DNA of 64,000 nt from Glycera tridactyla (Eukaryota), in NCBI GenBank assembly GCA_965644265.1, contig OZ286476.1:20026001-20090000 (forward strand), written 5' to 3'. Of the stretch, positions 3,551 through 57,548 are shown piece by piece (positions within the stretch are counted from its first letter, which is position 1; each line of letters starts with the position of its first letter). The notes beneath the pieces are model-generated. The model was not told where the DNA came from. It was given only the letters and a program-made list of their open reading frames with translations, and did no database searches. The position numbers and the translations under genes were made by a program.

Positions 3551-6500
3551 TTGAAGAAGAGTTCTTCGATGCACCAGCAGCAACTCAGGTGACTACCATG
3601 GTTGTACAGACAAAGCCACGTGAGGTGACTGAAGTAACAAAGGTTACTCAACAAGTAGGAATGGTTCCTAGTGAGATTGTCATGGAGATACCAGCACAAG
3701 AAACCAAAGTAACAACGATGGAGAAAATAAGTCGACATGTTAGAACTGTAACAATTGGGGACAAAACCATCACCCGGGTTTATGAGCAGCGGGGCGATCA
3801 GCAGCCAGAAATTGTTTCTGAAGTCATGACTCTGCCAACAGGAGAACAAGTACAGCCAGATGAAGTGACTAGAAGACTTGTCGAAGCTGAACTTCAGCTG
3901 ATTCCATCACAACCGCAGATGGTCCAGGAACAAACAACACTAATTAAGCAAGGTCAGGTCACTGAGATACAGGTCACTCCACAGCCACAACAGATTCAGG
4001 CCACTAAGGTCCGACGTGAAAGTAGAACAATGATCCTTGGTGACAGGAAGATTACAATTGTAACTGAACAGCGAGATGGACAAGAACCTGAGGTAGTATC
4101 TGAAGTGATGACCCTGCCATCTGGTGAGCAGGTTAAACCAGATGAAGTTACCATGAAAATGGTACGAGCTCAATTGCTTACTGGAACCCCAAGTATGGCC
4201 CAAGTGCAGACGACCATCCAGCAAACAGGACAGGTTGTGGAGATGGTGATTCCACCTCAGACTGAACAAGTCCAGGTCAGAGAAGTACACAGGGAAAGTA
4301 GAACCATTCACATAGGAGGAAAAACAATAACTCAGGTTATTGAACAGAGAGATGGTCAGGAACCAGAAGTGGTATCAGAAGTTATGACTTTGCCAACTGG
4401 CGAGCAAGTCAAGCCGGATGAGATCACCAAACAACTTCTACAAGCACAACTGAAAACAGGACCTCAGACTTTGGTGCAGGAACAGGTTACAGTCATGCAA
4501 ACGGGACATGTAGCTGAAGGTCTTAAGATGCCAGAACCTGAGCAGGTACAAGTGTCAAAGGTGCGTAGAGAGAGCCGAACAATTGTTATTGGTGATAAAC
4601 AACTCTCACAGATCTTGGAGCAGAAAAGCGGGCAAGAGCCTGAGGTTGTAGCTGAAGTGATGACATTGCCAACCGGTGAACAGGTGAAACCAGATGCAGT
4701 TACTCTCGAACTTGTTAAGGCTCAGTTTGGTGTCACTCCACAAATGTTGACCCAGGAAATACCCTCGAAAGAAGCTCCTGAGAAAGTTACTGAAGTGCTG
4801 ATCATGCCACCGAGTGAGGAAGTCAGGGTTTCAAAGATTCGTAGGGAGAGTAGGACAGTTATGATAGGTGATAAACAACTTACACAGATTATTGAGCAGC
4901 GTGGACAGCAAGAACCAGAAATAATATCAGAATTTGTCACATTACCTACTGGTGAGGAGGTCAAACCAGATACAGTGACCAAGAAATTGGCCAAGGCTGT
5001 TCTGGGACCTTCTCCCAAAATGATGAGTACTACACAGGTAGCACTTCAGCCTACAGAGCAGGTAACTGGTATGGTCATTGAACCCCAGGGTGAGGAAGTT
5101 ATTGTATCAAAGGTCCGTAGAGAAAGTAGAACACTCAAAATTGGTGACAAACAAATTCAGCTTGTCCTCGAACAGCGAGGTGATGCAAAGCCAGAAGTGG
5201 TGTCAGAGGTCATGACATTACCAACTGGTGAGGTGGTTAAAACAGATGAGGTGACTCATCAGTTAATCTTAGCCCAGTTTGGACCTGGCCCTGAAATGTT
5301 AGTTCAAGAACAGAAGGAAGAAGTCCAGCCTGAACAGATAACAGCAGTTTCAGTTCAAGTTTCACCTCCAACGCAGATTGCCAGAGGTGTCAAGGTTCAC
5401 AAGGAGACTAGAACAATCCAGATAGGTGATAAAGTAGTCACCCAAGTCGTTGAGCAGAAAGGTGATCGTCAGCCAGATATAGTTTCAGAATTTGTAACTT
5501 TACCATCAGGTGAACAGGTGAAACCAGATGAGGTCATACAGAAGCTTGTAAGAACTCATTTCCAGTCATCACCTGAGATGATGGTCAAGGAGCAAACATC
5601 AGAGGTTGGCCCAGAACAGATCACTAGTATTGTGGTCTGCCCTGAAGGTGAAGAAGTGCAGATGACTCGTGTCCGCAGGGAAAGCAGAACCCTTAGCATT
5701 GGTAACAAGAAAATTGTCCAAGTTATTGAACAGCGAGAGAACCGTACTCCTGAAGTTGTCTCTGAGGTGGTAACATTGCCTACTGGAGAGAATATCAAGC
5801 CAGACGAAGTCACTACCCAATTGATCAGGGCCCAGATAGCACCACAAGTAGTTGTGAAAGAGCAGCCTTTTGATCAGACTCCAGTCACAGAAATTAAGGT
5901 GACACCACAGCCGCCAAAGCGCATGGCAGGTAAAAAGATCAGTAGGGAAACCAGGACTGTAATTCTGGGAGACAAAACACTGACACAGATAGTCGAGGAG
6001 AAAGAAGGTCAGCAACCCACAATCATATCAACTGTGGTCACCTTGCCCAATGGCAAGGAAGTAAAACCAGATAAGTCAACAATGGAAATGTTTGAGACTC
6101 AGTTGAAGAAGCAGACAACCATGGTCCTTGAGACCAAGCCAACAAAGGTTCCTGCCCCCAAAGACAAAATCTCTGAAGTAACAATTGTTCCAAAAGGAGA
6201 ACATACAGTTGCTGAAACAGTTCACAAAGAAACTAAAACAATTACTCTCGGTAATAAAACTGTTACTCAGGTGATTGAGAAGCGTGATCAAAGAGAACCA
6301 GAAGTTGTTTCCACTGTAGTCACTTTGCCCTCAGGTGAACAGGTACAGCCTGACGAGGAAACAATGAAAGTGATCAAAATGCAACTCCCACAACAACCGA
6401 TGGTCTTGGAGCCACTCATTCCAGAGAAAGTCACTGAGATTGTTATTCAGGCAACACCAGAGGAAGTTAAACCTGTAACTGTCCATAGGGAAACTAGGAC

Positions 6501-12500: not shown

Positions 12501-13825
12501 GGTACAGGTTGGCCAAGTGCGCCAAGAGACCAGATCCGTAACTCTTGGGGACAAAACCATCACTCAGGTGATTGAACAGAGAGACGGTAGAGAGCCTGAA
12601 GTAGTATCAGAAGTATTCACTCTTCCAACTGGTGAACAAATTGTTCCTGATGAGGTCACAAAACAGACTTTGAAGGCAGTTATTAGTGGTGAGCAGCCAC
12701 AGATGTTGGCTCAAGAACAGACTACAGTTCTCGCCCCTGGTCAAATTCAGGAGATGGTCCTGATGCCACAAGAGGAGCAAGTCCAGATCGGCCAAGTGCG
12801 TCAGGAAACCAGGTCAGTTACTATTGGTGATAAGACTATGACTCAGGTTATTGAACAAAGGGAGGGCAGAGAGCCTGAAGTTATTTCCGAAGTTCTCACT
12901 CTCCCGACTGGTGAACAAATCCAGCCTGATGAGGTAACTAAACACATGTTTGAGGCACAGCTTAGAGGGGAACCACAGATGATGGTACAGGAGCAGGTGA
13001 CTACACTTGCCCCTGGTCAGGTTCAGGAAATGGTCATTGCACCTCAGGAGCAACAGGTATCACCTTTCCAGATCACTACTGAGATCCAACAAGCATCTAC
13101 GAGTCAACTTCCTACTGAAGTACATGAGCAATTGACCCCCCAGTCTGTAGAGGTCATCACAGAGGGTCTTGTTCCAGTTGCCCCAGAGCAAGTTGCACCA
13201 AGTCAAATAACTGTGGATACTACCCATGCAGGTGTAACTCTTCCACAGCCTGCTCAAGTGTATGAACAGGTCAGTCAAATGCCAACTGAAATGGCCACAC
13301 CTGAAGAAGAATTTCATGATGCACCTGAAAAGATGGCTCCTTCCACAGTACCTACAGAGACAATTGTTGCAGTCACACAGCAGCCACAAATTACTCAGAT
13401 TGGTGAGCAACCCGTGATTGATCAGCCCAAGGAAGTGATAACTGAGCAGGCACCACTTCAGCCAGAAGGTATACAGCCACAGGAAGTAGTTGCTCCCGCT
13501 GCTCAGCCACAGCCCCAAGTCACAGAACAAGTTGTTCTTAAGAAGGAACCAGTACCTGAACAACCAAAGCAAGAAGTCATGGAAGATGTCTCCATGATCA
13601 TTCAACAGCCTGTACAACCGCAGCAGGTGATGGAGGAAGTCTCCATGGTCATGGCACCAGAACAACCTCAACCAACACAAGTTACTGAAGATGTCACCAT
13701 GCAAGTAGTGCAGCAGCCGACAGAAGTAACCCAAGATGTGAGCATGATGATTCAACAAGAACAGAAGCCTCTTGATGTTATCGACTCGGCACAGATGACA
13801 GTGTTGACTCCACAGCAGCAGCAAG
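3551..13825 (+). CDS. Giant internal exon (10,275 nt, phase 1-1) encoding a ~90-aa repeat array
   Basis: 3446-aa ORF; TACTAAT branch-like motif 3517-3523; acceptor ctgcag|TT at 3550/3551; donor CAAG|gtatct at 13825/13826; length divisible by 3. Confidence 0.93.
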
Positions 13826-14420
13826 GTATCTACTACTGGCATGCTGCTTCCCTCAGCAGCGCATGAACATAGACAAGCTTGCATGGAGACCACCATCATG
13901 ACAATAAACCCATATTTGCAGAAATGCTACAATAGTATGCAGTTTTAACAATGTGTTTGAATGCTACAGAATGCCTTAGATAGATTTTTTTTCTTTCTTT
14001 TGATATTAAACACTTGAATGAGCACTTGTCAGTTGAATAACATCTTTTGTTTATTTTCATTTCATTTCATTTCAAATATTGATGTGCGCTTTGCATTTTA
14101 GTAAATATGTGGCACATGGTACATCAACCAAGTTGCATATTTATCTGTCAGTATTAGATGTTTTTTCTGTACGCAGTGCATACTAAAGTTTCACAGAAAC
14201 AAACTTAACTTGTACATGCTCTTTTAATGGTTTCATTCCATGTTATTGATGCCTATTTACTCACATAAATTTTTCATTCTTTTTCTGTTGCTATGTTGCT
14301 ATATGTTCATGCATCTTAAATCTTTCCGTCCTTGAATCATTCCATACTTAAGTATATATCACTGTTACTCCACCCTTGTTTCAATCATTTCAACCTTATT
14401 CTTTATGGACATACTCAACA

Positions 14421-14457
<37 letters not shown>

Positions 14458-17400
14458 GCCAAACAAATGTGATATCCCTGAAACCTATCATGAGTATGGC
14501 AGTAAAAGCTTGTTTCATGCTCTGTAGGTGCTCATATTCCGGCATTTCCGGATGATGTATAAATGAAAGAACAGCGTCTTAAATTGGGCATTCTTTTTGT
14601 GGTGTACCGCGGATAAAGTTCTGTGTGCAGCCAGCATTAACTGTACCTGCTTGATACCAGGAATCAAAATTTCTTGTTTGAAGTTCTTTGTCCTATCACA
14701 TGAAATGAGATTTCAGTGTAACAAATTTGTTATAATTATTGGGCAGTGAGGAACATATTCATGAACAGAAGTCATTAATCTTCATGTCATCTCTTTTCAC
14801 GTCTAGCCCAGTTATAAGCATATGATCAGTTTGTTCAGGTAGCAATTCAACATTCATTCTGTTCATCAAATGACACCATATTCCTATTCTCCTGCCTCTC
14901 ATCAGAAATGTATTCTGTTGGAAAAATGGGAACATCCGGTCCCATGGATTTGTATTGATGATAGTCATGTTATCTGTGAATGACAACAAGAAAGAATACA
15001 TCAAATTTTTGTTAGGAGGATCTTAAGTCCCAAATTTTTAGATGTCCAAATATTAGTCATATCCAGTGATGGAGGTGATTTTCATAATGTGATTGGCTAT
15101 AAAAGGGTGAACCACCTGAAATTGCTGCATCTGAATTGGTTCCTCAATCCAAATGCTTCAGATCACACTTGAGTGTGTGACTTCTGTAGACTTTTTTTGT
15201 GAAGCACTATGTCTTCCATTACATTATCATAACTCTAGAGTATTGTGCATGAAGCATTGTACCATTGCCTTACTGTTTGCATCCTGATATAGCTTCAGTT
15301 ATGATCTGCTGTGTTTTAGATAAGTAATATGAAGTAATATCAAATCTTGTCAATGGTCACTATATATAATTCTGTTTAGTATTTATTCGTTTATCTATTT
15401 GTTTCAAAGTTAATTCTCTATGATATATATGATAGATAACGAACAGAATGTATCTATAGATCAAACTTTCAATAATTTATCGTAAAGTTGTCTCACTTGT
15501 ATATTTATATGAAATATGTAAATAATTGAATGACTAGATGATTTTATGTGGCAGCAATATCGTATTTGCTCTTACTAATCTGCTTCAGTTCTGTTTGACA
15601 GATGTGCAGAAGTCAATAGAGCTATTGACTTCAATGGCCCACTCGGCTCTTTCTGTAATGTTCTATCTGCTGGCTACTCTACATCTCTTATGATGCTCAA
15701 AATCTTCAAACTAATACAGTCATATCTTCCTTGTTGGAACTATACGCTTCATAGACAATATTATCAGTATCGCAATAAGATTTATCATCTGAATAGCTTT
15801 ATCATTGATTCGGAAATATTTTGATTGGATTCAGACTTTCTTGCACTAGTTGTCCTCAAGACTATTGCATGCAAAGTCAATCCAATCAGTCCAACAAATT
15901 TCATTCAGATTGTTTTCGATAGTGATATAAAACCAATGAGAATAATATGGTCTATTCACTTGAAGGCTTTCGATACAAAACTAACATGATACAATCAGCT
16001 ATCTTGGTAATATGCTCATGCCTTCATCATTGTTGCTATTCTTGTAACATTCTTGTAACATTCATCTCAATCATCTCTCTCGCTCTTCATCCTTCATCAC
16101 AATCATCCTCTCATACTGACAGCTGCTCTGCTCTTACACAGTAACACACATCTGCGAACCATGCACATAAGTGAAACAACTATTCAAGTAAATATACACA
16201 TAATCACACTCATCCGCAAGCCTATTAATGAAATTGATGGGTTTGTGGGCATACAATTATCATTCAGTCATCCATAATGTGTGACTGGACACATTTACTT
16301 CAAGGTACCCCATTTATTCCTCTTTCTATATTTACACATAAGGTATCCTTTTCCCATTAGTATTCAGCAAACACTTTGTTTATTTGGTATGGTTCCATTA
16401 TATTTAATGGAGCTTTCCATGATCATATTCAATATCATGTGGTATGTATAAACCTTTTGTACTATTAAATATCATTCTTTTTATCTTTGCATATTAAATT
16501 CAACCAATATATATTATGCGCTGCGAATATTTTCTTTCAATATTTAAATACATGTTGTTTCATCACCAATTTATTGTACACACAAACTTCTGCTTCTTCC
16601 AATTCTTTCTCTGTACCTTCCTTTTTGTGCTTCTAATATCCACAGTCTTGTTGGCCTGTCATCAATGATTTGGCTTGCTTTCTCGCATCTGCATTGCCTT
16701 TCTGAGAATGTTTCTTGTCTCAAATCGATCCCTTCCTAGAAACCCTCATGGCGATCATGGTGTCATGAGGTTGGGATCATCGTGTTGTTTATCTGTTGGT
16801 TATTCATTTGCTGATTAAGAATTCTTCTTTTCTTTTCTAATCATCTTGCTTATATTTGTATCTCTTGATTTCAGCATGTTATTTGCATGCCAGGTCTGTC
16901 AACCTGACTTAGTAATTTAATGCGCTTAGGACTGACTCAGCATGTGAATAATAACTCAGGATACTGCCACCATAAGAGTTGTATTCTCTAGCACTCAGGT
17001 GTAATCATTCAAAAATACATTCCTGTTGTGTAAATGGTTGCTTTGATGCAATGTGCTTTGTTTACAGCTGTTACCATGGAAACAGTGCAACAAGTTGTCG
17101 AGGTACCCACAACACAGGTTGGTGCCCAGCAGGTGCAGGTTACTATGAGGACTGCACAGCTCGTGGGACCAACCACAGTGCAGACAGTGCAACAACAGCA
17201 AGAAATATCAGCGGAGATGGTTGAAGCTGGTCTTACTCCTCAGACCCAGGAGTCGGCTACGTCTGGTCAAGTTACAATGCAGTTTGTTACATCAGAACAG
17301 ACCATGCCAGCAGAAATGCAGGCTATGATTCAGCAAGCTCAATTCCAAACTGGACAAATCGGCGAGATCTCTATCGATACGATCCCCGAAGGTGCTACAG

Positions 17401-20400
17401 AACAGCAGGTCACTACCATAATCAGGTCTGCAGAAGTTGTACAGCCGAAGCCACTTCAGGCTATGGAACAACAAGCCCAGTTCCAGATGGGACAGATGGG
17501 AGAATTCACTGTTGAGGCCATGCCAGTGGATGCAACTCAAGAGCAGGTTATGACACAAGTGACTACAGCTCAGGTCTTGCAACCTACCCAGTTACAGGCA
17601 ATAGAACAACAGGCACAGTTCCAGATGGGACAAATGGGAGAATTCACAGTTGAGGCAATGCCAGAAGAATCAACCCAAGAGCAGGTGATGACACAAGTCA
17701 CTACTGCTCAAGTTGTGCAGCCTGCGCAACTGCAAGCAATGGAACAGCAGGCCCAGTTCCAGATGGGACAGACTGGAGAATTCACAGTCGAAACAATGCC
17801 AGAAGAATCGACCCAAGAGCAGGTGATGACACAAGTTACTACTGCTCAAGTTGTGCAGCCTGCGCAACTGCAAGCAATGGAACAGCAGGCCCAGTTCCAG
17901 ATGGGACAGACTGGAGAATTCACAGTCGAGACAATGCCAGAAGGTGCAACTCATGGGGAAGTTCTGACTGAAGTAACAACAGCCCAAGTGATGCAGCCAA
18001 TGCAGATACAGGCGATTGAACAACAAGCTCAGTTCCAAGTGGGTCAAGTTGGAGAATTCGTTTCAGAGATGGTTCCTCAAGAAAGTACAACTGTTGAAGT
18101 CACTACAAAGGTGACCTCTGCTGAGGTACAACAGCCTATGCACATGCAGGCTATGGAGCAACAAGAACAGTTCCAAGTCGGTCAGGTACAAGAATTTGCT
18201 GTTGAAATGAAGCCAGAGGGTGTTACTCAGGAGGAGGTTGCACCAGAGGTTACCTCTGCCATGATCATTCAACCAACACAACAGCAGGCACTGGAACAAC
18301 AGGCACAGTTTGCTGTTGGACAGTTTGGTGAAATAGACACTGAAGTTGCGCCAGATGTTGTAGCACCGACTGATGTTACTCTTGATGTAGCACAAGCACA
18401 AGCCGAGCCTCAGATAATGACTCAAGTTGGTCTGCAACAAGAAGCCATGGCCTCTGAGGTGATTGCAGAAGGAATTCAAGAGCAGACACCTGAGCTGATT
18501 GCACCACAGGAGATTGCTGTTGATGTCACTATGGCGTCACAGGTGACACCTGCTGAAATTCGTGTTCAGGAGCAAATCTCGAGAGTTCTCTCTGAGGAAA
18601 GTCTTGAAGAGGAGTTTGTTGATGCTGCTGAAGAAGTGGCTGTACCTACCGAAATTGGTGTTGCCACAACCACAGCGCAAGTTGAAATGCCTCAAGCCAC
18701 ATTCCTAACAGAACAACAAGCACAGATGCAGATGGAAGTGACTGCTGAAGGTGTGGTGGCACCACAACCTGAAGAGATCATTGCTGGACAGGTTCAAGTG
18801 ACAGCTGTCACGGCAGAGATGGGTATCAAACCACAAACACTCGTTATGGAACAAGCACCAGAAGAAATGCCCAGTGAACAAATTGCAGAAGGTGTCCAAG
18901 CACCAGAAGGTGTGGTGATCGCTCCAGGAGAAGTGGCACCAATGGTTGTCACCGCAGAATTGAGTGGTGTACCACAAGTCCAAGCCATGGAACAAGCTCA
19001 AACAGTTCCAGGAGAAGAGGTGACCAGTGGAGTTATGGTTATTGAAGGTCAGACACTTGCACCTGAACAAGTCACAGGGGTCATGGATACTGCTACTGCA
19101 GCGTTGATGATGCCTTCCCAGATGCATGTTGTTGAACAACAGGGGCAAGTCACCACAGAAGTTATTGAGGAGTCTGTAACTCTGCCAACTGGTGAAACTG
19201 TTGTAACACAGAAAGTTATCACTAAAACGTCAACTGCAACACCACAGGAACCCATGGTCATGCAAGTCGGTCCACAGGAAGTAGTCATGACGAGTGAGCA
19301 AGTTGATACCGTTCAACCACAGCAGATCCAGGAAATGACAACGCAACAAGTCGTCACTACCTTGGGTACTGCAACTGCTGAGGGACAAACTACTTTGACC
19401 ACCGCCCAAGATTTCACCATGACTATGGAAGGTCAGCCACAAGAGATCACTATGGTAACAGATATGCAGATGATGGAGCCACAGCAGGTTACTACCGAGA
19501 TGGATTCCGCCATGGTTACCGTCCCGAGTATGATGGCGACTGAAGTTGTCTCAGAAGGTATAACCATGGATGTGACACAGCCGACACAAGGTAACGGTCA
19601 CGCATGGTGTGACGCTAGCGAAATGGCATCCTTCTTTGCATACTTTTTATACTTCATGTGATGCATGTCTCATTCGATTACTATCATTATTATTAGTACA
19701 ATTAAATGTATTGCATGAATTATGAATTAAAATTTGCATGTTACTTAATAACTTTAATTTGATTTGTGTGTATTCTTGTTATTAGTTTAAGTCACATTTT
19801 TATTTTGCTCTTAATTCTTTTCTTCTGTTTGGTCTATTCTGCAGCCACTCATTCTAAGCTATGTCTTGCATTTGAACACTCCGAGTGTTTCTGTTGCTTA
19901 GAATGCATTCATCTCATTTTAACATTATGATACGTCTTGCTTTTCTTTTCTGGATAACTGCTCTTGATTTGTATTCCTGTTATGGAATCAAGAGATGTGA
20001 TATCTAGCTACTAGCGCTGATATTCTTTTTCAGTTTTTGCTCAAATATAAGTTGCATGTGGCATGATGCTGCATCCTAATATAGTGATAATTTGTACTTT
20101 TTATGTGTGTTTTGTATGTAGTCAAGTCACTTATCAGAGGGCGGAACATCTAGCTCTCTTCAATCTGAAACACAATGCATATGTTAACCTGTGGATAGAT
20201 ACATGCCGTTGAACTATCAACCAACCAACCTTTCAGAGATGATGACATTATCTAGTTTTGACTCTCGGAAGTATTTCTTCTGTTTGAGATCACTAGAAAC
20301 GAATGTGATTCAGAGACTGCGCATTGCAAAGAGTGTAAGATGTGTGTATTCAGCAACAACAGAGCCTTATCCTTTGCAGCAAATCTGCAAAAAGTTTTCA

Positions 20401-22200: not shown

Positions 22201-22264
<64 letters not shown>

Positions 22265-23397: not shown

Positions 23398-23445
<48 letters not shown>

Positions 23446-34005: not shown

Positions 34006-34045
<40 letters not shown>

Positions 34046-34078
34046 GGTCTCTTTCTCTGTCTCTCTGTCCACACAATA

Positions 34079-34117
<39 letters not shown>

Positions 34118-43100: not shown

Positions 43101-46100
43101 AACCCAGAACCATTCTGGAAACAAATTTACCATGTTCAGACTAGCTTCAACATGGCATTTTTGATGTCCTCTGCAAATTTCAGGCACAAAAGTTGCCCTA
43201 AAGATGGATTAGAAATAGAGATTCAAATTTCGGAATGAGTAATAGAGCTGAATTTTGGTATTTGTCACTTTTTATCAGTTACTTCAGCTATGCTAAGAGT
43301 GGTTGAGAAATTGCAGCATTTGAATGAGTCCTGCATGCAATTGGTTTGTGGTTTGTTTATTTCAGTTTGTGCATGTTGGTGATGATGACGAAAAGGTGGT
43401 GCTTCCGGAAGCCATTGTGGATTCTGGGAGTCAGACTGATCCCTCTGACGATGAACACCATTACGAGAACTCCCCTCCAGCCTTTCATGATAGACTCACA
43501 ACCTTAATGAACCGTCCAAAACTTATCTCTGGATTTTCCATTGAATCTGATGTATCAGCTGTCTCGACAAATACATACGAATCGTTTGCATCTGGGCCTG
43601 TCAAAGATTCAGAAGAAAGTGCATCTGCAATTGATCTCAGCGATGAACGAATACAAGACTTTGATGACTTTGCCATTGAAACTTCTGGCGATGTATACGA
43701 AGATATACCGTCTGATATTATAGATTCTCATATTGTGCAAAACGAAACCCCGCCTGAAATTCCACCCAGATCTGTCAACAGTGTGTCTATAACTGATGAA
43801 GAAAAACTCAAAAATAAAGAAATATTGGAAGAAAGAGAAGCAGAGGCAGACTCTGATAGTGACAGTGATATTAGTAGTCTCTATGAGCATATCAATGCAG
43901 CACGACAGCAAATGCAACGCCAGGAGTCTTTCCAACCACTCATCAAAATATCTAGCCCAGCTGACGACACACCCTCTGATACCTCAAAAGAATCTTCGCA
44001 AGAGGATTTTTTGGAGACGCATGAGGAAGAAGATGCAGCCAGTTCATATGGTTCTGTAGTTACCGTAGTGGAAAAGACAGTTGTTGACCTCAACAAAGAA
44101 TCTGATTATGTTAATGTTGATTTTGTGAACAATGTAAAAAAGCCTCCATCAGAAACAAACAGTCATGAATCTTCAGAGGATGATTACCTGGAGCCTATTA
44201 GCTCTGATAGTTCTCAAAATTTGGATGAAAGTGAGCTGTACGAGCCGGTGAATTTATCGGATGTAGATCTGTGGCATATTGCTGATCTGCTAGTCTCAGA
44301 AGCTATGAGATCAGCTTTGGAAGAGTATCGCAACGCAATGCCACACTTACTGAAGGATTCATTGAATGTTGATATAAAATTACACTATGATGACGAAGAG
44401 GGGGACTATGTGGAAATAGTAGATAAGCCTGATGATGGGTTCTGTAAGAATGAAGCAGATCCCGACTATATCGATATAATAACTCAAGATGAATTTGTCT
44501 CAACGATGCATAGGGATAGGAATGATCCGGATTATATTGAAATAATCAGTAAGGACGAGTTTCCTTCAAAACATTTATCACAATTGCTATCTTGTGGTGA
44601 TGAAACGAAGTTGGATGAGCCTTTGAAAGATGACAGTCAGACACTGGATATCATAACTCCTGTCCAATCGCAGAAAATCTTCCTCACCCAAAGAGGAGTA
44701 ACTGAGATGCATGCTGGGAAGAATATTGCAGCATGGGAGGTGGCTGAAAAGATTGTTAACATCGCTACGGAGAATGCATTGTATGAATTTTCATCCCACC
44801 GGGTAAGATCCTGCATGTTCTGACATTCCTGCTTGCATTTTTCTGCCTTTGTCTTGACACAAAATCCATCCCTCACTATTTTCTGTCCTCAAATCTTGAC
44901 ACACTCCTGCTTTGACATAGATGTGAAATTGTGTTTAATCCCTATTTACACATGTATACTTGGAAGAGAATTGTATTCACATGCACATGCACCCAATATT
45001 TTGCTCACAAATACACACGCACAAGAAAAAAATAGTTATGTACAGATATTTTGAGGATGGGTGAGTTGCAGTTAGCAATCTAGTAAATTTGGTTGCTGAT
45101 TAGGGAGAATCAATATTTACACATGAATGAAAAACCACATGCTGTTCTCAAAATAATGGTCATTTCCAGTATCATGATACTCTCTCAATCTGCCAGTATT
45201 TCATGAATTGTCATGTGCATTGAAATAATACACAGTACTTTGTTTTACACAGTAATTGTTTTAATGTCTTCTCAGCCCAAGCTGGATCATTTAAAACAGA
45301 GAAAATGAGTCAATTCTCAAATATTGTTTGAACAATATTCAGATGAGCAAGCCAAGCCCCATTCATCGGTGTCACATGGAAAACAGGATTTTATGGTGTG
45401 ATCAGACTCAGTGATTTGTATTGGGTGTATCACAAATTCTCTCTTCGATGCTTAACCGAGAGGTGTGTCTGAACTGTTAGCAACTTCCACTTGACAACCT
45501 TTGTGGCTGTCTTATCTCATGCATGCTATGACTCCAGCCAACCACGCAACCTGAATCAGTTGATTCTTGTTACAGGGCATTTCATATTTGCATTTTGGTA
45601 ATGAACTATTTATCAGGGTTAACTTTTATATTAACATTTGAGGACTGATGTTTTCAGGTGCCGGGTGAAGCGCCGTTCTTCGTCACAGTTCCTGCTCCAA
45701 TCAGTGTAATTGCTGGTGACACCGCTGTCATTGAGGCGACAATTGGTGGATCGCCGCGTCCAAACGTCACCTGGTTACATCACAACATGGAACTGCCGAT
45801 TAGCGAGCGCTACTTGTAAGTACAACTTTCAATCTCATCCTGTATTACATTATCAAAATATCCCAAAATATTCAAGCAATATGGTCCTCATCCCTTAACT
45901 GACACCTATGTGTATATTCATTCTCATGTGGAATGTATCAATTTTACTTTTGTCTCCTTTATTCTTGTAAATGATCCCCCAACTACCAATATAATGCGAT
46001 ATTCAAGTGTTTGTATTTCCATCTTTACCTGGAATGTATCGATTTTACTTTTATGTCTGTTATAATAGTAAATGATTATCAAGCTAAATGTAATATCATA

Positions 46101-47958: not shown

Positions 47959-48012
<54 letters not shown>

Positions 48013-51000: not shown

Positions 51001-53739
51001 TAGGGGGTTAGTTTCAGGAAATTTGGTCAGGTTTCAGGAAATTTTGTCTTAATGCACTTGCATCACTGAAAATGCCGTTGATGGGTCCATCAAGGTCAAT
51101 TTGAGGCATGTAGGGATTTACCAGAATAGTCAGCTACTTTAAGTTGACGTCCTCTCTGGTTCCCCATCATCTTGTGTTCAGGGATTGTGTGAGTGATGCT
51201 TGCAAGGAACTGAGCATGTAAGTCCCATAGATCAAGAATGCACAGTATACATTATAATTTGGGTTGATTCATGCCAGCTAACACAATCTCAATCGACCAA
51301 CCAACATCCGGTAATGGCAGAGCTGTACTGTGTTATGCGATGTTACATGTTTTGCATGTCTTGTTCAAACGATTTGTGTCTGTGACTCAATAATGATATG
51401 ATTTTTGTGTGTATTGTCAACATTTTCCATCGTGCATATCATCCAACATTTTCAGAAACTCCCCAAATGTCAACTCTTATTTGTGTTAATAATATACAGT
51501 ATAATGAGCACAATTATCATGAAAATATAGGACATCATTCCATGATTAATATTCATGGAGGAGCATTCAAAGGGGAAATGAGACAATTACCAGACAGAAA
51601 TCCATCTTGGCCCCATTTTTTCCAGTTATAGGCTCGAGATCCCGCCATATTTTTGGCTACATCTACATCGTTGCAGCTTTCATTGACTGGTGCAGTATTC
51701 TGTGAAATTATTAAGGATCAGGAATGTCTGCTCAACATTGTCAACATTATTGTTGGGAAATCTTGCTTGATGTCTCCTATTCAAAGGAAACAAATAAGGG
51801 ATATCCTATGATCATTTTGCAGTAATGATTGGGGAAAAATGCTTTCTCCACGGCATATGTAAATCCATTGCTTTTTCCATGACATCTGTCAATCGACTTT
51901 TTATCAAGATTCTTCATGTAGGTGTGGCTTTGCACAAATATGCGCAGTTCAGATACAGTACAATTTTGTACTAAGCATGACTTTTATTATGCAATTACAT
52001 TGTACTTGTTCGAGGCGACATCTCTTCATATTTCCCATCCAAGTATTTATCACTATGCTCGACCTGCAGTAAGCAAGAACTTGTTCTAAGTGCAGATATG
52101 CCATCATTAGATTCACTCTAATCATGAAGAGTAGGTAGAGGTGTGTCTGAACTGTCAGCTACTTTTATTTGACACCTTTGAGGTCCCCATCATCTTGTGA
52201 TCAGGGTTTGTGAGAATTATGTCTGCAAGGGACAGAACATCTAGCTTTCATTGACCAGGAACACATGGCATACATAATCCTGTGGGTTGATACAGGCCGT
52301 TAAACCTCAAACAAGCAAACAAACAAGCCTATTGATTTCTTTGTATCCGTGCTTGGAAGAATTACATCCGTGTTTGCTTTCACTGTACTTAGATGTTCGA
52401 CACTCACTTACCTGTTTTGTTTTGTTTTTTGTTCTGCAGCTCAACTTACACAGAAGAGATGACAGTTTCACTCACAGTTCACAATGTCACCCTCGAGGAT
52501 CAAGGCGACTACACAATCCGACTCTTGAATGACTTCGGAATGTCGGAGTATACTGTCACTCTGACGATCGACGTTGAGGCGCCAGCATTCATCATGCCAC
52601 TGCATGACGTCGAGATCACACTCAGCCAGACCGTAACTCTGGAGTGCACATTCGCTGGACGTCCCAAGCCTGAAATCAAGTGGACAATCTTTGGTATGGA
52701 AATTATCCAGTCGGAGAAATACATCATTGAAATCGAGGAATACACGACGCGATTACATATTACGAGTGTCACGCTGGATGACACGGAAATGACGTATACT
52801 TGTATCGCTCGCAACCCCGGTGGCCAAGCGGAGACAAGTGCTCATCTCATCCGTCCACAAGGTTTGTTAACGAGTTGCCGTTCTGAGTTGGGTACGCAAT
52901 GGCCCGTTACCCCATGCATGTTATGCATTTAGTGGACCCATCCCATTGATCAAAAAGAGCTTGCATGTTTAGGACTGTTACACCCATTCTTGCAACTTAT
53001 TTCCCATGCAGTTTGACTACTTGTGCATATTTGTGTAATTCTACCAAGACTTAGTTGTGCTTGTGTGACCCTCTGGCTTCCATATTTTCTGGATGTCAGA
53101 TACTGCATGAAGCAGCTCTTTTAACATGAAGATGCTTGCCTAAACTGAAATATGTCAAAATTTATGAGCTGTTGTAAATACTGCCTGCTTTCTGTTGGAT
53201 ATATGCAGATTTCAACAAATTAACAAGTATAATTTGCCCACTGTTCCATTCGATTTCATACAAAAAATCACGTTAGATTCATGAAAAACAAATTTTGATT
53301 GTACAGCTACTCAATATATGGTATTACCTCTGCTGTAAGTCCATCTCCTATATTTGAGATGAACAATGGCGTATCCTCACTTTCGGGTTATGTTAGTAAG
53401 AAATTATCATTTTACTACCTTATCCCATAAGGAAATGAAATCAAATAAGAAACTATGTTACCCTACAATTATGTCAGTCAAGAGGATGTGGAGCATTCCT
53501 ATATTCTATGCCTTTCAACCAAAGAATTCATGATCATGCAAAACATTTCCATCATGGGAATATTGATGAAACCTCATGAGTTATGCTCAGCATTAGATCA
53601 GACCTCATATTGAATCGAATCTTGCGAAGGAATGTATTTTCCAACTGGGTGTTGTACACATTGTAAATCCCTGACCTGTACGCTTACATGTTTCTCATAC
53701 AGGGTTGCATCCAGAGGGACACTAGGGCCATGATGCCAC

Positions 53740-53770
<31 letters not shown>

Positions 53771-56700: not shown

Positions 56701-57548
56701 TGTACCAGTTAATAGGTAATTATTTGTCAAGAATTGGTATCTTATTGATGGTTCGATTTTGCAATGAAAAAGATTGTTCAAATCGGTGATGGTGAAGAGT
56801 ATTTGGATCACTTTAGTATATATAAGCTAACACTGCATCAATTTTATGTGTGTTTCATGGATTTCATAAATTTGTTAATATAACAATAGATAATTCAAAG
56901 AAAGCATTGGGTAAATCTGTCATCCTGGGACCGTCTTCAGAGCAGATCATAACTTTCAAGATTATAGCATTGAGAGATGCTGGTAGTTATTTGGTACATA
57001 GGCATTTGTTATATTAGCATAGAAGGATAATGATCTTGTTAATATAATGCCTCTAATTGTATTGTCGCAAATCTCTGGAAATGTTTCAAAGGAAGATTCC
57101 CAGATAGTTCACTTCATTTTAATCAGCATCATAGATTTCCCAATGAATCATAAGAGTAGACACAGTGGGACCTGCAATAAGCAAGTATTTCTAAATCATA
57201 GAAACATTCTGGAAAAAAGCATTTGCTCATAGCAGGTGCTCGCTCTCCATGAGCTTGCTCATTGCAGCTTCCACTGTACTAATTGTTGGTTTGACTAGAT
57301 GAAGTATTTTTGCAGTGTAGTAGCAGTAATTTTTTTATGAATAACCCACCTTGCACACACCTTGTTTGTCGTTTTTTCCAGGTCAGCAGGAAAACTATGA
57401 CTCGAAAATTGTGCATCCCGAAGTGATAGCTTATGCCATACTTGCCGGAATTCTCATGCTTAAGGCCCTCCAATCGACCAGCTTTTTCCTTGTCCTGTTG
57501 TTCGCGCTCATTGCCTTGGTGTATGGGCTCCTTATCAAAACCACCTAG
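3551..57548 (+). CDS. Multi-exon titin/Sallimus-like giant muscle protein gene, partial (5' end upstream of window)
   Basis: Phase-compatible AG/GT exons join into one frame (20,078 nt + 1 upstream nt = 6,693 codons including stop; needs the candidate 13-nt exon at 36367). Encodes SH3, five I-set Ig domains, IQ and long E/V/Q/P/T-rich regions. Orthology not established. Confidence 0.85.
3730..13030 (+). repeat. 34 tandem coding repeats of ~85-95 aa (core RRESRTxxIGDKxxTQVIEQ...PEVVSEVxTLPxGEQVKPDEVT)
   Basis: Counted manually from the ORF translation: 34 GDK-like and TLPxG core pairs. Confidence 0.9.
11018..12720 (+). repeat. Six near-identical 279-bp (93-aa) units inside the giant exon
   Basis: gtgcgccaagagaccagatc recurs at 11122, 11401, 11680, 11959, 12238, 12517; more diverged flanking copies at 10843 and 12796. 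Confidence 0.95.
13903..13908 (+). promoter_or_regulatory. AATAAA after the read-through stop (13864-13866); possible intronic poly(A) signal
   Basis: Hexamer 37 nt after TGA with U-rich sequence downstream; common by chance in AT-rich DNA. Confidence 0.3.
14424..14454. repeat. (TA)n microsatellite
   Basis: Direct reading. Confidence 0.95.
15602..15693 (+). CDS. Candidate alternative terminal or poison exon (DVQKSIELLTSMAHSALSVMFYLLATLHLL*)
   Basis: TACTAAT 15573-15579, pyrimidine tract, ttgacag acceptor; phase 1 matches the upstream donor; stop at 15691-15693. Confidence 0.35.
17068..19590 (+). CDS. Large internal exon (2,523 nt, phase 1-1), Q/E/T/V/M/P-rich and basic-residue poor
   Basis: 875-aa ORF; acceptor tttacag|CT; donor CAAG|gtaacg; divisible by 3. 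Confidence 0.9.
17319..18422 (+). repeat. Eight 138-bp (46-aa) coding repeats (QAMEQQAQFQMGQxGEFxVExxPE...)
   Basis: Units start at 17319 + 138n through 18285 with no indels. Confidence 0.92.
21293..21440. mobile_element. Internally deleted copy of the 39795 MITE
   Basis: Near-identical 3' ~140 bp; TA-flanked CAGT/ACTG ends. Confidence 0.85.
22201..22263. repeat. (TCAA)n microsatellite
   Basis: Direct reading. Confidence 0.95.
22988..23044. mobile_element. 57-bp deletion derivative of the 25399 element
   Basis: Same 13-bp TIRs; tttatg duplicated on both flanks. Confidence 0.8.
23392..23444. repeat. (CA)n microsatellite (another at 24043-24081)
   Basis: Direct reading. Confidence 0.95.
23540..23615 (-). 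mobile_element. tRNA-like SINE head truncated by an N-gap
   Basis: Minus strand carries the B-box-like ggttcaaatccc. Confidence 0.4.
23616..23760. other. Assembly gap (N-run)
   Basis: 145 N. Confidence 1.
24527..24551 (+). CDS. 25-nt microexon (phase 1-2), EVQEGMTI(S)
   Basis: Long pyrimidine tract plus ctccag; gtaagt donor at 24552; restores frame only together with 25726-25784. Confidence 0.7.
25399..25665. mobile_element. 267-bp DNA transposon derivative with 13-bp TIRs and 6-bp TSD
   Basis: cagggatgtgatt / aatcacatccctg; atcatc on both flanks. Confidence 0.8.
25726..25784 (+). CDS. 59-nt exon (phase 2-1), LTSQQQVITEDTTDLTVIP
   Basis: ttatag acceptor; CCTG|gtaagt donor; composition matches flanking exons; 25+59=84 nt. 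Confidence 0.75.
27612..30521 (+). CDS. Acidic, low-complexity exon (2,910 nt, phase 1-1) ending in an SH3 domain
   Basis: Acceptor ttacag|AT; extends the 982-aa ORF 5'; donor CAA|gtaaga. Confidence 0.92.
30281..30451 (+). other. SH3 domain
   Basis: AISSYDPENAEVMSLHEGEKVEVLDDVQDDWWYVRK...EGWVPGQFL shows the ALYDY-like, LxxGD/E, WW and GxxP signatures. Confidence 0.92.
30815..31010. mobile_element. Second copy of the 695-895 MITE family
   Basis: Shared tggtagccagaggg...ttggctac...caggtagc...gccctg 3' end. Confidence 0.7.
31750..31879. other. Assembly gap (N-run), 72 bp upstream of the Ig1 exon
   Basis: 130 N. Confidence 1.
31952..32263 (+). CDS. Exon encoding I-set Ig domain 1 (phase 1-1)
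   Basis: ccacag acceptor; GAAG|gtgagc donor; FDCIITGNPAPTIAW...EDTGRYTVVAKNLMG. Confidence 0.95.
33353..33477 (+). CDS. Exon encoding N-half of Ig domain 2 (phase 1-0)
   Basis: tttttttcag acceptor; APQLVQKPKPQVVNEGEDVTFECRLVANPQPE; GAG|gttggt donor. Confidence 0.93.
33678..33878. other. Assembly gap (N-run) in the intron splitting Ig2
   Basis: 201 N. Confidence 1.
34005..34144. repeat. Compound (CTGT)n/(CT)n/(CA)n microsatellite just upstream of the 34179 exon
   Basis: Direct reading. Confidence 0.9.
34179..34374 (+). CDS. Exon encoding C-half of Ig domain 2 (phase 0-1)
   Basis: cttcag acceptor; MQWCKED...QDSGNYTLTVRNDYG; C|gtaagt donor. Confidence 0.93.
35622..35695 (+). mobile_element. 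tRNA-derived SINE head or tRNA pseudogene
   Basis: A-box TGGCTCAGTGG 35632-35642 and B-box GGTTCGAACAC 35675-35685; no convincing cloverleaf. Confidence 0.55.
36367..36379 (+). CDS. Candidate 13-nt microexon (phase 1-2), PITA(R)
   Basis: A 1-to-2 phase bridge is required between 34374 and 37505/39014; tgtgtttatcccaccag acceptor and CAG|gtatct donor fit. Confidence 0.5.
37120..37221 (+). repeat. 51-bp tandem duplication
   Basis: atagaaattgaat...gatgttg(g/a)aaggtgga occurs twice. Confidence 0.85.
37505..38005 (+). CDS. Symmetric exon (501 nt, phase 2-2) with DFRxxL-type repeats
   Basis: ctttatcag acceptor; AA|gtaagt donor; motifs at 37545, 37686, 37755, 37824, 37893, 37962. Confidence 0.85.
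39014..39309 (+). CDS. Exon encoding I-set Ig domain 3 (phase 2-1)
   Basis: ctgtttag acceptor; FSCVVHGVPPPHVAWY...EDAGEYTVRVQNEHG; G|gtgagt donor. Confidence 0.95.
39352..39520. mobile_element. Diverged copy of the same MITE family
   Basis: ta-cagaaaaacccatcttaggagacc ... aaaacaggttccactg-ta. Confidence 0.7.
39795..39972. mobile_element. Tc1/mariner-type MITE (CAGT termini, TA TSD)
   Basis: cagtaaaacctgtcttgggagacc ... ggtctcccaagacaggtttcactg flanked by TA on both sides. Confidence 0.85.
41522..42180 (+). CDS. IQ-motif exon with Pro-rich extension (phase 1-0; alternative donor possible at 41652)
   Basis: catttcag acceptor; GAG|gtacga donor at 42180; CAG|gtcaga at 41652 is also phase 0. 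Confidence 0.85.
41572..41628 (+). other. IQ calmodulin/light-chain-binding motif
   Basis: AAVKIQAAFRGMQAREKVK matches IQxxxRGxxxR. Confidence 0.85.
42886..43029. mobile_element. Related Tc1/mariner-type MITE
   Basis: Perfect cagtcgaacctcc / ggaggttcgactg TIRs with TA TSD. Confidence 0.85.
43366..44802 (+). CDS. Acidic symmetric exon (1,437 nt, phase 0-0) rich in Tyr motifs
   Basis: ttatttcag acceptor; 499-aa ORF; CGG|gtaaga donor. Confidence 0.85.
45658..45815 (+). CDS. Exon encoding N-half of Ig domain 4 (phase 0-2)
   Basis: ttttcag acceptor; APFFVTVP...GGSPRPNVTWLH; TT|gtaagt donor. Confidence 0.92.
45900..46290 (+). repeat. Degenerate ~100-bp tandem duplications
   Basis: ggaatgtatc(a/g)attttactttt twice and cactcttgacc...ttccccacct...ggtccttgttgg twice at ~100-bp spacing. 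Confidence 0.6.
47532..47683. repeat. GC-rich long inverted repeat (~68-bp arms, 15-nt loop)
   Basis: Arms 47532-47599 and 47615-47683 pair with about 5-6 mismatches or gaps. Confidence 0.9.
47917..50368 (+). mobile_element. Non-autonomous Helentron-type element (HINE/DINE-1-like)
   Basis: T-rich start; 17-bp subterminal inverted repeats acctcgtctcaacgaag 47922-47938 / cttcgttgagacgaggt 50330-50346; (GTCGGC)n at 47961-48012; central tandem array; 3' hairpin gccttca-g-tgaaggc 50349-50363. Confidence 0.85.
48600..50250 (+). repeat. 147-bp tandem repeat array (~11 units) inside the HINE
   Basis: ttttgggg anchor at 48691, 48838, 48985, 49132, 49279, 49426, 49573, 49720, 49867, 50014; degenerate at both ends. 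Confidence 0.95.
52128..52325 (+). mobile_element. Dispersed SINE-like repeat, representative copy (others at ~502-690, 2262-2535, 20136-20230, 33150-33285, 34544-34714, 40016-40145, 45458-45520, 51125-51305)
   Basis: Shared core catcatcttgtgttcagggtttgtgagagtgatgcctgcaagggacagaacatccagct in most copies, some ending in (AATC/AACC)n tails. Confidence 0.7.
52440..52861 (+). CDS. Exon encoding C-half of Ig domain 4 and Ig domain 5 (phase 2-1)
   Basis: Strong T-tract plus ctgcag; EDQGDYTIRLLNDFG, then APAFIMPL...LECTFAGRPKPEIKW...YTCIARNPGG; G|gtttgt donor. Confidence 0.95.
54767..55195. mobile_element. Imperfect-TIR element with TTAA-like flanks (Kolobok-like MITE)
   Basis: agtcggtcaag...tgtggcgggta versus tacccgccaca...ttgacagagt; ctaa/ttaa flanks; same 3' end at ~62485-62512. 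Confidence 0.5.
55706..55778 (+). CDS. Candidate small exon VVSEVVLNYEGGSG(ESEIFSITET) with two GTGAGT donors (after 55744, phase 1; after 55778, phase 2)
   Basis: attttttattatcag acceptor in phase 1; two consensus donors 34 nt apart. Confidence 0.45.
57382..57548 (+). CDS. Stop-containing terminal exon encoding two hydrophobic helices (putative membrane hairpin anchor)
   Basis: ttgtttgtcgttttttccag acceptor in phase 1 with the 52861 donor; GQQENYDSKIVHPEVIAYAILAGILMLKALQSTSFFLVLLFALIALVYGLLIKTT*; C-ending codon usage resembles the Ig exons. Confidence 0.7.

What the first reader, a model, noticed from the sequence alone, without database searches (positions are those of the whole stretch)
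3551..57548. Hypothesis: a membrane-anchored, FFAT-bearing, PKA-anchoring titin-like scaffold linking sarcomere/actin to ER/SR
Seen: one frame combines titin/Sls-type Ig and SH3 modules with three FFAT-like motifs, DFRxxL repeats, an IQ motif, two AKAP-like helices, a Tyr-motif exon and a two-helix hydrophobic C-terminus. Most of these sit on frame-preserving cassette exons. Established: FFAT motifs bind the MSP domain of ER VAP proteins; DFRxxL binds F-actin in smooth-muscle MLCK; obscurin reaches the SR only indirectly via small ankyrin-1. Titin/Sls-class proteins are normally soluble. Inference: a splice-tunable giant tether and signalling hub at sarcomere-SR contacts, an architecture I do not recognise as described.
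Basis: partly seen in the sequence, partly recalled or inferred. Interest (0 to 1): 0.9.

Follow-up and report, generated by a model that had tools for sequence, protein, structure and literature searches.

The report
Titin-like gene with ER-binding motifs
The window holds the middle of a giant titin-like muscle gene of an invertebrate whose spring region carries three good copies of the motif that binds the ER protein VAP. It may also have an alternative last exon ending in a membrane anchor, but whether that exon is ever used is unproven.

Summary
Observation: largely confirmed. Fourteen + strand exons, one of them a 28-nt micro-exon I had to add, chain in phase into one 6,668-codon frame. 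All three N gaps fall in introns.

Pfam confirms five I-set Ig domains, one SH3 and one IQ motif. Three EEEFxDA (FFAT-like) motifs occur against 0.06 expected. Four strict DFRxxL motifs lie exactly 23 residues apart. Acidic YxxΦ motifs are enriched in one exon. The loose AKAP pattern is not enriched, although the two helices are clear paralogues.

The exon at 57382 has a strong acceptor in the right phase, no donor, 54 codons and a 19-residue hydrophobic segment three residues from the stop. No intronic control ORF looks like this. It has no homologue and no transcript evidence.

Unchecked notes from this scan place further titin-like exons 45 kb upstream and 61–368 kb downstream on the same piece. 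The exon at 57382 is therefore at best an alternative, novex-3-like end, not the gene's terminus.

Interpretation: partly supported. The titin-class scaffold with linear-motif modules stands. VAP binding is plausible. The membrane anchor and PKA anchoring are untested inference. No homologues were found in any protein search.

The parts
3551..13825 (+). Giant symmetric exon (10,275 nt, phases 1-1). It encodes 34 repeats of about 92 aa and a P/Q/E/V-rich tail.
   Evidence: ORF and splice sites. Repeat alignment. A 279-bp tandem array lies at 10468-12944. No Pfam family.
3559..3579 (+). FFAT-like motif 1. Core is EFFDAPA, preceded by EE, at the very start of the giant exon.
13309..13329 (+). FFAT-like motif 2. 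Core is EFHDAPE, preceded by EE, after the repeat array.
17068..19590 (+). Symmetric exon (2,523 nt, phases 1-1) with Q/E/M/V-rich repeats of about 46 aa.
   Evidence: Tandem repeat of 138-bp period.
18612..18632 (+). FFAT-like motif 3. Core is EFVDAAE, preceded by EE.
27612..30521 (+). Symmetric exon (2,910 nt, phases 1-1). It is an acidic, probably disordered region ending in an SH3 domain (30290-30445).
   Evidence: Pfam SH3_2 E 3.6e-11 and SH3_1 E 6e-10. PDB sequence hits to p47phox and Fyn SH3. Splice sites.
31952..32263 (+). Ig exon (I-set, phases 1-1).
   Evidence: Pfam I-set E 2.3e-22
33353..33477 (+). First half of an Ig domain (phases 1-0).
   Evidence: Found by a phase-constrained exon search. 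Pfam I-set profile positions 1-31.
34179..34374 (+). Second half of the same Ig domain (phases 0-1).
   Evidence: Pfam I-set profile positions 33-89
35162..35189 (+). Predicted 28-nt micro-exon (phases 1-2) that restores the reading frame between the Ig exon and the DFRxxL and next Ig exons.
   Evidence: Best-scoring candidate of a splice-matrix search. Acceptor scores 9.9 and donor 9.7. Context is ttgcag|...AA|gtaagt. In silico only.
37505..38005 (+). Symmetric exon (501 nt, phases 2-2) with the DFRxxL array. Strict copies lie at 37755, 37824, 37893 and 37962; degenerate copies at 37545 and 37686.
   Evidence: Expected 0.006 by chance.
39014..39309 (+). Ig exon (I-set, phases 2-1).
   Evidence: Pfam I-set E 2.6e-24
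41522..42180 (+). Exon (phases 1-0) with an IQ motif IQAAFRGMQAR (41584-41616), two polyproline stretches and a YMDM motif.
   Evidence: Pfam IQ 23.3 bits against a cut-off of 20.3..
43366..44802 (+). Symmetric exon (1,437 nt, phases 0-0). It is acidic and Ser-rich with 14 Tyr, many of them in acidic-YxxPhi context. It holds two paralogous amphipathic helices (44266-44328 and 44728-44790).
   Evidence: Helices also appear in a low-confidence AF2 model.
45658..45815 (+). First half of an Ig domain (phases 0-2).
   Evidence: Pfam I-set profile positions 1-47
52440..52861 (+). Second half of that Ig domain plus a complete I-set Ig (phases 2-1).
   Evidence: Pfam I-set E 2.9e-27 with two stretches. 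Titin is the top PDB sequence hit.
57382..57548 (+). Candidate alternative 3' terminal exon. It has a phase-1 acceptor, 54 codons plus a stop, and hydrophobic segments at 57423-57461 and 57480-57536. The second segment ends 3 residues before the stop.
   Evidence: The acceptor scores 12.4 when left out of matrix training, third best of all non-exon AG sites. There is no usable donor. Hydropathy and null. GC is 47% against 36-41% in the flanks. The sequence is unique in the window. No homologue.
58294..58299 (+). The only AATAAA within 850 nt after the stop. It is a possible polyadenylation signal, giving a 3' UTR of about 750 nt.
   Evidence: This is weak evidence, because the hexamer is common in AT-rich DNA.

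Best explanation
The window is the central 'spring and signalling' part of a very large titin/Sallimus/connectin-class muscle gene of an invertebrate, transcribed on the + strand.

Large exons whose lengths are multiples of three encode lineage-specific elastic arrays:
- 34 copies of a roughly 92-residue unit, each a small three-strand-plus-helix module joined by Q/P/E/V-rich linkers;
- a set of roughly 46-residue Q/E-rich repeats.

Between five I-set Ig domains lie short docking modules:
- an SH3 domain;
- an MLCK-type DFRxxL array, likely F-actin binding;
- an IQ motif, likely binding calmodulin or a light chain;
- an acidic Tyr-motif region;
- two paralogous amphipathic helices.

Three EEEFxDA motifs sit in the linkers that flank the repeat arrays. 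They are most simply read as FFAT motifs that let the filament bind VAP on the ER/SR surface. This step is inferred.

A terminal-type exon at 57382 can follow the last Ig exon in phase. It would give a truncated isoform, analogous to titin novex-3 or Sls/kettin, that ends in a tail-anchor-like hydrophobic segment. This step is also inferred. The main transcript probably runs on to the Ig/Fn3 super-repeat exons that other readers noted downstream.
For: - One frame of 6,668 codons results from splice sites chosen by strength, with 12 of 13 junctions in phase at first pass.
- Pfam finds I-set x5, SH3 and IQ, and the top PDB sequence hit of the last Ig is titin.
- EEEFxDA occurs 3 times against 0.06 expected, and DFRxxL 4 times at exact 23-residue spacing. 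DFRXXL is the F-actin-binding repeat of MLCK (PMC2196421).
- The FFAT core is defined as an acidic tract plus EFFDAxE (PMC7705450).
- The repeat unit folds with a core pLDDT of 84-94.
- The exon at 57382 has a rare strong acceptor, the right phase and no donor. Its tail-anchor-like hydropathy is seen in 0 of 13 intronic control ORFs.
- Scan notes place titin-like exons up- and downstream on the same piece (these are unchecked leads).
Against: - There is no transcript evidence for any junction.
- No homologue was found for the giant exon, the SH3 exon, the last Ig exon or the terminal exon, so conservation of any motif is untested.
- The micro-exon is a prediction.
- The terminal exon has a neutral codon score (-0.03 per codon against 0.25-0.70 for the others). 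Its synonymous-codon score is only weakly above null (9% of controls reach it).
- Continuity with the downstream titin-like exons rests on unchecked notes, whose strand I could not see.
- Muscle expression is assumed from the family.
Confidence: 0.6

Rival explanations
1. One reading: a single protein that is constitutively membrane-anchored by the 57382 exon. It binds VAP through FFAT motifs, anchors PKA through two AKAP helices and binds actin through DFRxxL, so it acts as a splice-tunable sarcomere-SR tether and signalling hub.
For: All the named elements exist and can be chained in one frame. The FFAT-like motifs and the hydrophobic exon are both beyond chance. The two helices fit the PhiPhiXX periodicity of RIIa-binding helices described in PMC3494852.
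Against: - It needs four untested bindings and one untested splice to hold together.
- The loose AKAP pattern is not enriched (6 against 8.6 expected), and such helices also bind Dpy-30-type domains (PMC3494852).
- The gene very probably continues downstream, so the anchor would mark a minority isoform.
- A protein anchored in the ER by its own tail has less need of FFAT motifs, which usually recruit proteins from elsewhere to the ER.
Confidence: 0.12
2. The exon at 57382 is not an exon but a decoy acceptor followed by a chance open frame. The protein is a purely myofibrillar elastic filament, and the EEEFxDA motifs are lineage-specific linker sequences or bind something other than VAP.
For: The exon has no homologue and a neutral codon score. 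The phase match has a 1 in 3 prior. T-rich DNA translates to hydrophobic peptides. No other titin-class protein is known to carry a membrane anchor, and no paper in the library links FFAT and titin.
Against: Only three non-exon AG sites in the window score 12 or more, and the other two are followed by stops within 19 codons in every phase. None of 13 control ORFs reaches the hydropathy. There is a GC bump like that of true exons. Three copies of a seven-residue pattern matching the FFAT consensus are not a linker accident.
Confidence: 0.3
3. The window holds two or more adjacent genes, for example a repeat-protein gene (3551-30521) and an Ig/IQ scaffold gene (31952-57548), not one transcript.
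For: The introns are long (up to 8 kb) and contain gaps. There is no transcript evidence. The two halves differ strongly in composition.
Against: Every exon from 3551 to 32263 is phase 1-1, and the whole series chains without a stop. No exon has a start-codon context or a terminal-type structure before 57382. No polyadenylation-type end or donor-less exon was seen in between.
Confidence: 0.07

Closest known systems
Titin / Drosophila Sallimus (Sls, kettin) / C. elegans TTN-1 / crustacean connectin
   Same: It is a giant gene with I-set Ig domains of the muscle type. Very large symmetric exons encode unique-sequence elastic arrays between Ig blocks. Truncated isoforms by alternative 3' ends are known (titin novex-3, about 700 kDa, cited in PMC12812942; kettin, from my own knowledge). 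That Sls has an SH3 is also my own knowledge and was not checked here.
   Different: The repeat units here have no Pfam family and no fold match, and they are not PEVK in composition. No member of the class is known to carry FFAT motifs, a DFRxxL array together with an IQ motif, or a hydrophobic C-terminal exon. Fn3 and kinase parts are not in this window.
Obscurin / UNC-89
   Same: Ig domains are combined with an SH3 and an IQ motif. Obscurin is the known sarcomere-to-SR link (PMC12812942).
   Different: Obscurin reaches the SR indirectly, through its C-terminus binding the membrane protein small ankyrin-1. Here the proposed contact is direct, through a tail anchor and/or VAP. No DH-PH or kinase domain is found in the window. 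Here the SH3 precedes the IQ and stands without a RhoGEF.
Smooth-muscle/non-muscle MLCK N-terminus
   Same: There are tandem DFRXXL motifs next to Ig domains. MLCK has three (short form) or five (long form) copies that bind one actin monomer each (PMC2196421).
   Different: There are four strict and two degenerate copies on one symmetric exon of a titin-like gene, and no kinase nearby in the window. Actin binding is untested.
FFAT-motif clients of VAP (OSBP, CERT, Nir2, VPS13 and others)
   Same: There is an acidic tract followed by E-F-F-D-A-x. Motif 1 differs from the EFFDAxE consensus only at position 7. All three motifs lie in probably disordered linkers.
   Different: Known clients are lipid-transfer proteins, channels or organelle tethers. 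None is a sarcomeric filament protein. Motifs 2 and 3 have His or Val at position 3. I could not compute published FFAT scores because the matrix was not available.
Tail-anchored SR/ER proteins of muscle (junctophilins, SLMAP, phospholamban, VAP itself)
   Same: There is one hydrophobic segment of about 19 residues ending 3 residues before the C-terminus, and no signal peptide upstream.
   Different: A second, shorter hydrophobic stretch (13 residues) precedes it, so a hairpin or in-plane helix is possible. The tail would sit on a protein of more than 6,600 residues. There is no sequence relative.

Membership tests
Titin/Sallimus-class giant muscle proteins | Tandem intracellular I-set Ig domains | tested here: met
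   Five I-set domains, Pfam E 1e-22 to 3e-27. Titin is the top PDB sequence hit for the last one.
Titin/Sallimus-class giant muscle proteins | Long unique-sequence elastic segments between Ig blocks, on large exons | tested here: met
   Exons of 10,275, 2,523 and 2,910 nt, all phase 1-1, encoding tandem repeats or disordered acidic sequence. The composition is not PEVK (P+E+V+K is 36%).
Titin/Sallimus-class giant muscle proteins | Ig/Fn3 super-repeats and a C-terminal kinase | not testable with these tools
   None in the window. Other readers' unchecked notes place Ig-Ig-Fn3-Fn3-Fn3 super-repeats 248-368 kb downstream on the same piece.
FFAT-motif VAP clients | Core EFFDAxE with an upstream acidic tract | tested here: met
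   The three motifs are EE-EFFDAPA, EE-EFHDAPE and EE-EFVDAAE. E[FY]xDA occurs 3 times against 0.06 expected, and 0 of 2000 shuffles reach 3. The consensus is as given in PMC7705450. No published score was computed.
FFAT-motif VAP clients | [quoted passage not shown] | not testable with these tools
   The motifs lie outside the folded core of the repeat and in linker sequence. Binding needs a pull-down or ITC.
Tail-anchored membrane proteins | A single C-terminal transmembrane segment with a very short luminal tail | tested here: inconclusive
   A 19-residue segment with KD 2.82 ends 3 residues before the stop. Whether the exon is expressed and joined to the Ig exons is unknown. A second 13-residue hydrophobic stretch complicates the topology. 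No dedicated TM predictor was available.
A-kinase anchoring proteins | Amphipathic helix with PhiPhiXX periodicity that binds the RIIa docking domain | tested here: inconclusive
   Two helices fit the pattern and are paralogous. However, the loose pattern occurs 6 times against 8.6 expected by chance. Their hydrophobic moment is only at the 76th-81st percentile of the protein. There is no PDB sequence hit. Such helices also bind Dpy-30-type domains (PMC3494852).
MLCK-type DFRXXL actin-binding arrays | Three or more tandem DFRXXL motifs | tested here: met
   Four strict copies at 23-residue spacing plus two degenerate ones. The motif definition is from PMC2196421. Actin binding is untested.
Obscurin/UNC-89 | SH3 followed by DH-PH (RhoGEF) and tandem kinases | tested here: not met
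   SH3 and IQ are present, but no DH, PH or kinase hit appears in any exon of the window.

The most novel reading that the evidence does not exclude
An invertebrate titin-class gene produces a truncated isoform whose C-terminus is inserted into the SR/ER membrane by a tail anchor. Its spring region also binds VAP through three FFAT motifs. Together these would give a direct, stretch-bearing filament link between the sarcomere (Ig domains, DFRxxL-actin) and the SR. In vertebrates that job is done indirectly by obscurin and small ankyrin-1, and for invertebrates no molecule is known.
Probability: 0.15. Interest if true: 0.8.

Novelty: new variant of a known kind. Interest (0 to 1): 0.55.

Why it matters
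How myofibrils hold the sarcoplasmic reticulum in register is known only for vertebrates, where obscurin's C-terminus binds small ankyrin-1. For nematodes the review PMC12812942 states that the linker is unknown.

A titin-class filament that carries VAP-binding motifs would be a simple, testable candidate for that link in invertebrates, the more so if one isoform has its own membrane anchor. It would also be the first sarcomeric client of the VAP/FFAT contact-site system.

Even without the membrane story, the locus shows a titin-like spring built from a new small folded repeat, and it packs actin-, calmodulin- and SH2/SH3-type docking motifs onto exons that can be skipped in frame.

Tried and rejected
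Homology searches, all blank:
- SH3 exon, giant exon and last Ig exon in the 5.8-billion-protein index. This index is length-limited, so longer gene models would be missed.
- Terminal exon against 1.84 billion representatives.
- ESM Atlas look-alikes of the terminal exon were only generic small membrane proteins below 0.8.

Because of these blanks, no test of conservation or of the 52861|57382 junction through transcript-derived proteins was possible.

Other negative or inconclusive results:
- PDB sequence searches with the two helices gave nothing at E of 10 or less.
- The published FFAT scoring matrix is in a supplement that is not held, so I give pattern statistics instead of FFAT scores.
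- The codon log-odds score does not support the terminal exon. However, it is confounded by amino-acid composition, and a synonymous-only score has little power in this gene.
- Single-sequence AF2 of the helix region was low confidence (pLDDT 34).
- Fold searches with the repeat model gave no match with TM of 0.5 or more.
- I rejected an alternative acceptor at 37468 that would fix the phase without a micro-exon, because its matrix score is -8.3.
- I rejected the strong acceptor-like sites at 54212 and 14528 as exons, because stops follow within 19 codons in all phases.
- No further Ig exons or coding-like segments were found outside the model on either strand.
- One paper search was wasted on a prefix match to 'twitching'.
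Full report
**What is in the window**

The window is AT-rich metazoan DNA (40% G+C) with three N runs, at 23616-23760, 31750-31879 and 33678-33878. The + strand carries a series of long open segments. I placed exon boundaries by splice-site strength only, and then asked whether the intron phases agree.

| Exon | Phases | Content |
|---|---|---|
| 3551-13825 | 1-1 | giant repeat exon |
| 17068-19590 | 1-1 | Q/E-rich repeats |
| 27612-30521 | 1-1 | acidic region, SH3 |
| 31952-32263 | 1-1 | Ig |
| 33353-33477 | 1-0 | first half of an Ig |
| 34179-34374 | 0-1 | second half of that Ig |
| 37505-38005 | 2-2 | DFRxxL array |
| 39014-39309 | 2-1 | Ig |
| 41522-42180 | 1-0 | IQ |
| 43366-44802 | 0-0 | Tyr motifs, two helices |
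| 45658-45815 | 0-2 | first half of an Ig |
| 52440-52861 | 2-1 | second half of that Ig, plus a full Ig |
| 57382-57548 | phase-1 acceptor, then stop | hydrophobic tail |

Twelve of the thirteen junctions fit at first pass. The single break lies between 34374 (phase 1) and 37505 or 39014 (phase 2).
- A 28-nt micro-exon at 35162-35189 closes it. This was the top candidate of a search with splice matrices built from the gene's own sites, and its context is ttgcag|...AA|gtaagt.
- An alternative acceptor at 37468 scores -8.3 and was rejected.

**The assembly gaps**

All three N runs lie in introns of this model.
- The first is in the 8-kb intron after 19590.
- The second ends 72 nt before the acceptor at 31952.
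- The third lies between the two halves of an Ig domain. Those halves match Pfam I-set profile positions 1-31 and 33-89, so nothing is missing from that domain.

No frame has to be read across a gap. An extra symmetric exon hidden in a gap cannot be excluded.

**Domains**

- Pfam finds five I-set Ig domains (E 1e-22 to 3e-27). Two of them are split across exons into complementary profile halves.
- Pfam finds one SH3 (E 4e-11).
- Pfam finds one IQ motif above the curated cut-off: IQAAFRGMQAR, 23.3 against 20.3 bits.
- The last Ig's best solved relative by sequence is titin.
- The SH3 is nearest to the p47phox and Fyn SH3 domains, which says little.
- No Fn3, kinase, DH or PH domain is present.
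- An Ig profile built from the window finds no further Ig exon on either strand.
- A coding-score scan finds nothing else exon-like.

**The repeats**

The 10,275-nt exon encodes 34 units of about 92 residues. Six of them are nearly identical 279-bp copies, so the copy number may be recent or mis-assembled.

With the 30-unit alignment, AlphaFold gives a confident core (pLDDT 84-94) of three beta strands and one helix, flanked by low-confidence linkers. Neither the PDB nor AlphaFold DB clusters hold a convincing match, with all TM scores under 0.5. The unit has no Pfam family. It is a lineage-specific module. The exon is therefore a chain of small folded beads on flexible linkers, not PEVK-like random coil.

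**Short motifs**

All counts are on the spliced translation.
- **FFAT-like motifs.** E[FY]xDA occurs three times against 0.06 expected, and no shuffle out of 2000 reaches three.
  - All three share EEEFxDA: EEEFFDAPA at 3559, EEEFHDAPE at 13309 and EEEFVDAAE at 18612.
  - The first differs from the FFAT consensus (an acidic tract followed by EFFDAxE, PMC7705450) only at the last position.
  - All three lie in linkers that flank repeat arrays.
- **DFRxxL.** It occurs four times at exactly 23-residue spacing, with two degenerate copies upstream. DFRXXL is the F-actin-binding repeat of MLCK (PMC2196421).
- **Tyr motifs.** Acidic-YxxPhi motifs in the 43366 exon number six against 1.9 expected (p about 0.005). 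They could equally be SH2 docking sites, LC3-interacting motifs or sorting signals.
- **AKAP-like helices.**
  - The loose AKAP signature occurs 6 times against 8.6 expected, so by itself it is no evidence.
  - What stands is that the two helices (44266-44328 and 44728-44790) are each other's best 21-residue match in the whole protein (score 37, next best 23).
  - They also fit the PhiPhiXX periodicity of RIIa-clan ligands, a class that also binds Dpy-30-type domains (PMC3494852).
  - Their close likeness to the D-AKAP2 helix is my recollection and could not be checked.

**The hydrophobic exon**

Evidence for:
- Its acceptor scores 12.4 when left out of the training set. That is the third best of all non-exon AG sites in about 40 kb.
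- The two stronger sites are followed by stops within 19 codons in every phase.
- The phase fits the preceding Ig exon (G|GT gives Gly).
- The frame stays open for 54 codons.
- There is no usable donor before or after the stop (best score 2.9 against 6.2-9.7 for true donors). It is therefore a terminal-type exon, with one AATAAA 746 nt downstream.
- G+C rises to 47% against 36-41% in the flanks.
- The last 19-residue window has Kyte-Doolittle 2.82 and ends three residues before the stop. None of 13 intronic phase-1 ORFs of 40 or more residues reaches 2.5.
- The sequence is unique in the window.

Evidence against:
- It has no homologue among 1.84 billion representatives.
- Its composition-dependent codon score is neutral.
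- Its synonymous-codon score is reached by 9% of controls.
- There is no transcript evidence.

My estimate is that a real, at least occasionally used exon is somewhat more likely than not (about 0.55).

**Context**

Other readers' unchecked notes on the same piece describe:
- Ig-spacer-Ig modules 45 kb upstream;
- about 50 copies of a 40-44-residue module ending 2 kb before the window;
- a titin-like gene with three giant skippable exons 61 kb downstream;
- Ig-Ig-Fn3-Fn3-Fn3 super-repeats 248-368 kb downstream.

If these lie on the same strand, the window is the I-band-like middle of one gene of about half a megabase. The donor at 52861 would normally splice onward, and 57382 would be an internal alternative end. 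Titin has such a truncated isoform, novex-3, as described in PMC12812942. Kettin, a truncated Sls isoform, is a second example from my own knowledge.

**Mechanism**

Shown:
- one titin-class reading frame;
- its domains;
- the non-random motifs;
- a terminal-type hydrophobic exon in phase.

Inferred:
- The filament is elastic and splice-tunable, because five of the motif-bearing exons are symmetric.
- It binds actin through DFRxxL and a calmodulin-like protein through IQ.
- It touches the SR/ER through VAP-FFAT contacts.
- A truncated isoform inserts its tail into the membrane.

FFAT binding does not depend on the tail exon. It is the better-supported half of the membrane story. PKA anchoring is the weakest element.

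**Comparison and novelty**

The locus meets the tested features of the titin/Sls class. It fails the obscurin test, having no RhoGEF or kinases in the window.

Vertebrates link the sarcomere to the SR through obscurin and small ankyrin-1. For nematodes the linker is stated to be unknown (PMC12812942). No paper in the library links FFAT with titin or with a sarcomeric protein.

I file it as a new variant of a known kind. It is a titin-class gene with a new repeat module, an unusual set of linear motifs and a possible anchored isoform.

**Limits**

The species is unknown to me. None of the protein searches found a relative, so conservation, the most informative computational test, could not be run.

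Noticed in passing
window 35162-35189 (+): Predicted 28-nt micro-exon (peptide VEKTVELQ) with a strong acceptor and an AA|gtaagt donor. It is the only way found to keep the frame between the Ig exon ending at 34374 and the exons at 37505 and 39014.
   Followed up: partly
window 41791-41871 and 42082-42093 (+): The IQ exon also carries two polyproline stretches (PSPPPLPP and FPPPPPS), which are possible SH3 ligands. It also has a YMDM motif, the classic YxxM context of PI3K p85 SH2 ligands; that link is from my own knowledge.
   Followed up: no
window 28502-28564 (+): A third, weaker copy of the helix motif of the 43366 exon (LLQYIATITSTDSFETALSEQ). It is the next-best match after the two paralogous helices, with score 23.
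   Followed up: no
window 10468-12944 (+): Within the giant exon, about nine 279-bp units form a tandem array, and six of them are nearly identical. This indicates either recent amplification or an uncertain assembled copy number.
   Followed up: partly
window 39793-39980, 21299-21448, 39350-39522, 25224-25336: A dispersed element of about 150-190 bp occurs in several introns at 74-93% identity. It is probably a SINE-like repeat. Short inverted fragments also occur.
   Followed up: partly
window 23400-23500, 24000-24130, 34000-34145, 47920-48050: Long (CA)n/(TG)n and related dinucleotide microsatellites occur, some of them abutting the assembly gaps. This probably explains why the assembly broke there.
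   Followed up: no
window 7191-13899 (-): Long antisense ORFs (237-309 aa) lie opposite the giant repeat exon. They are most simply a by-product of the repeat's codon composition and not genes.
   Followed up: no
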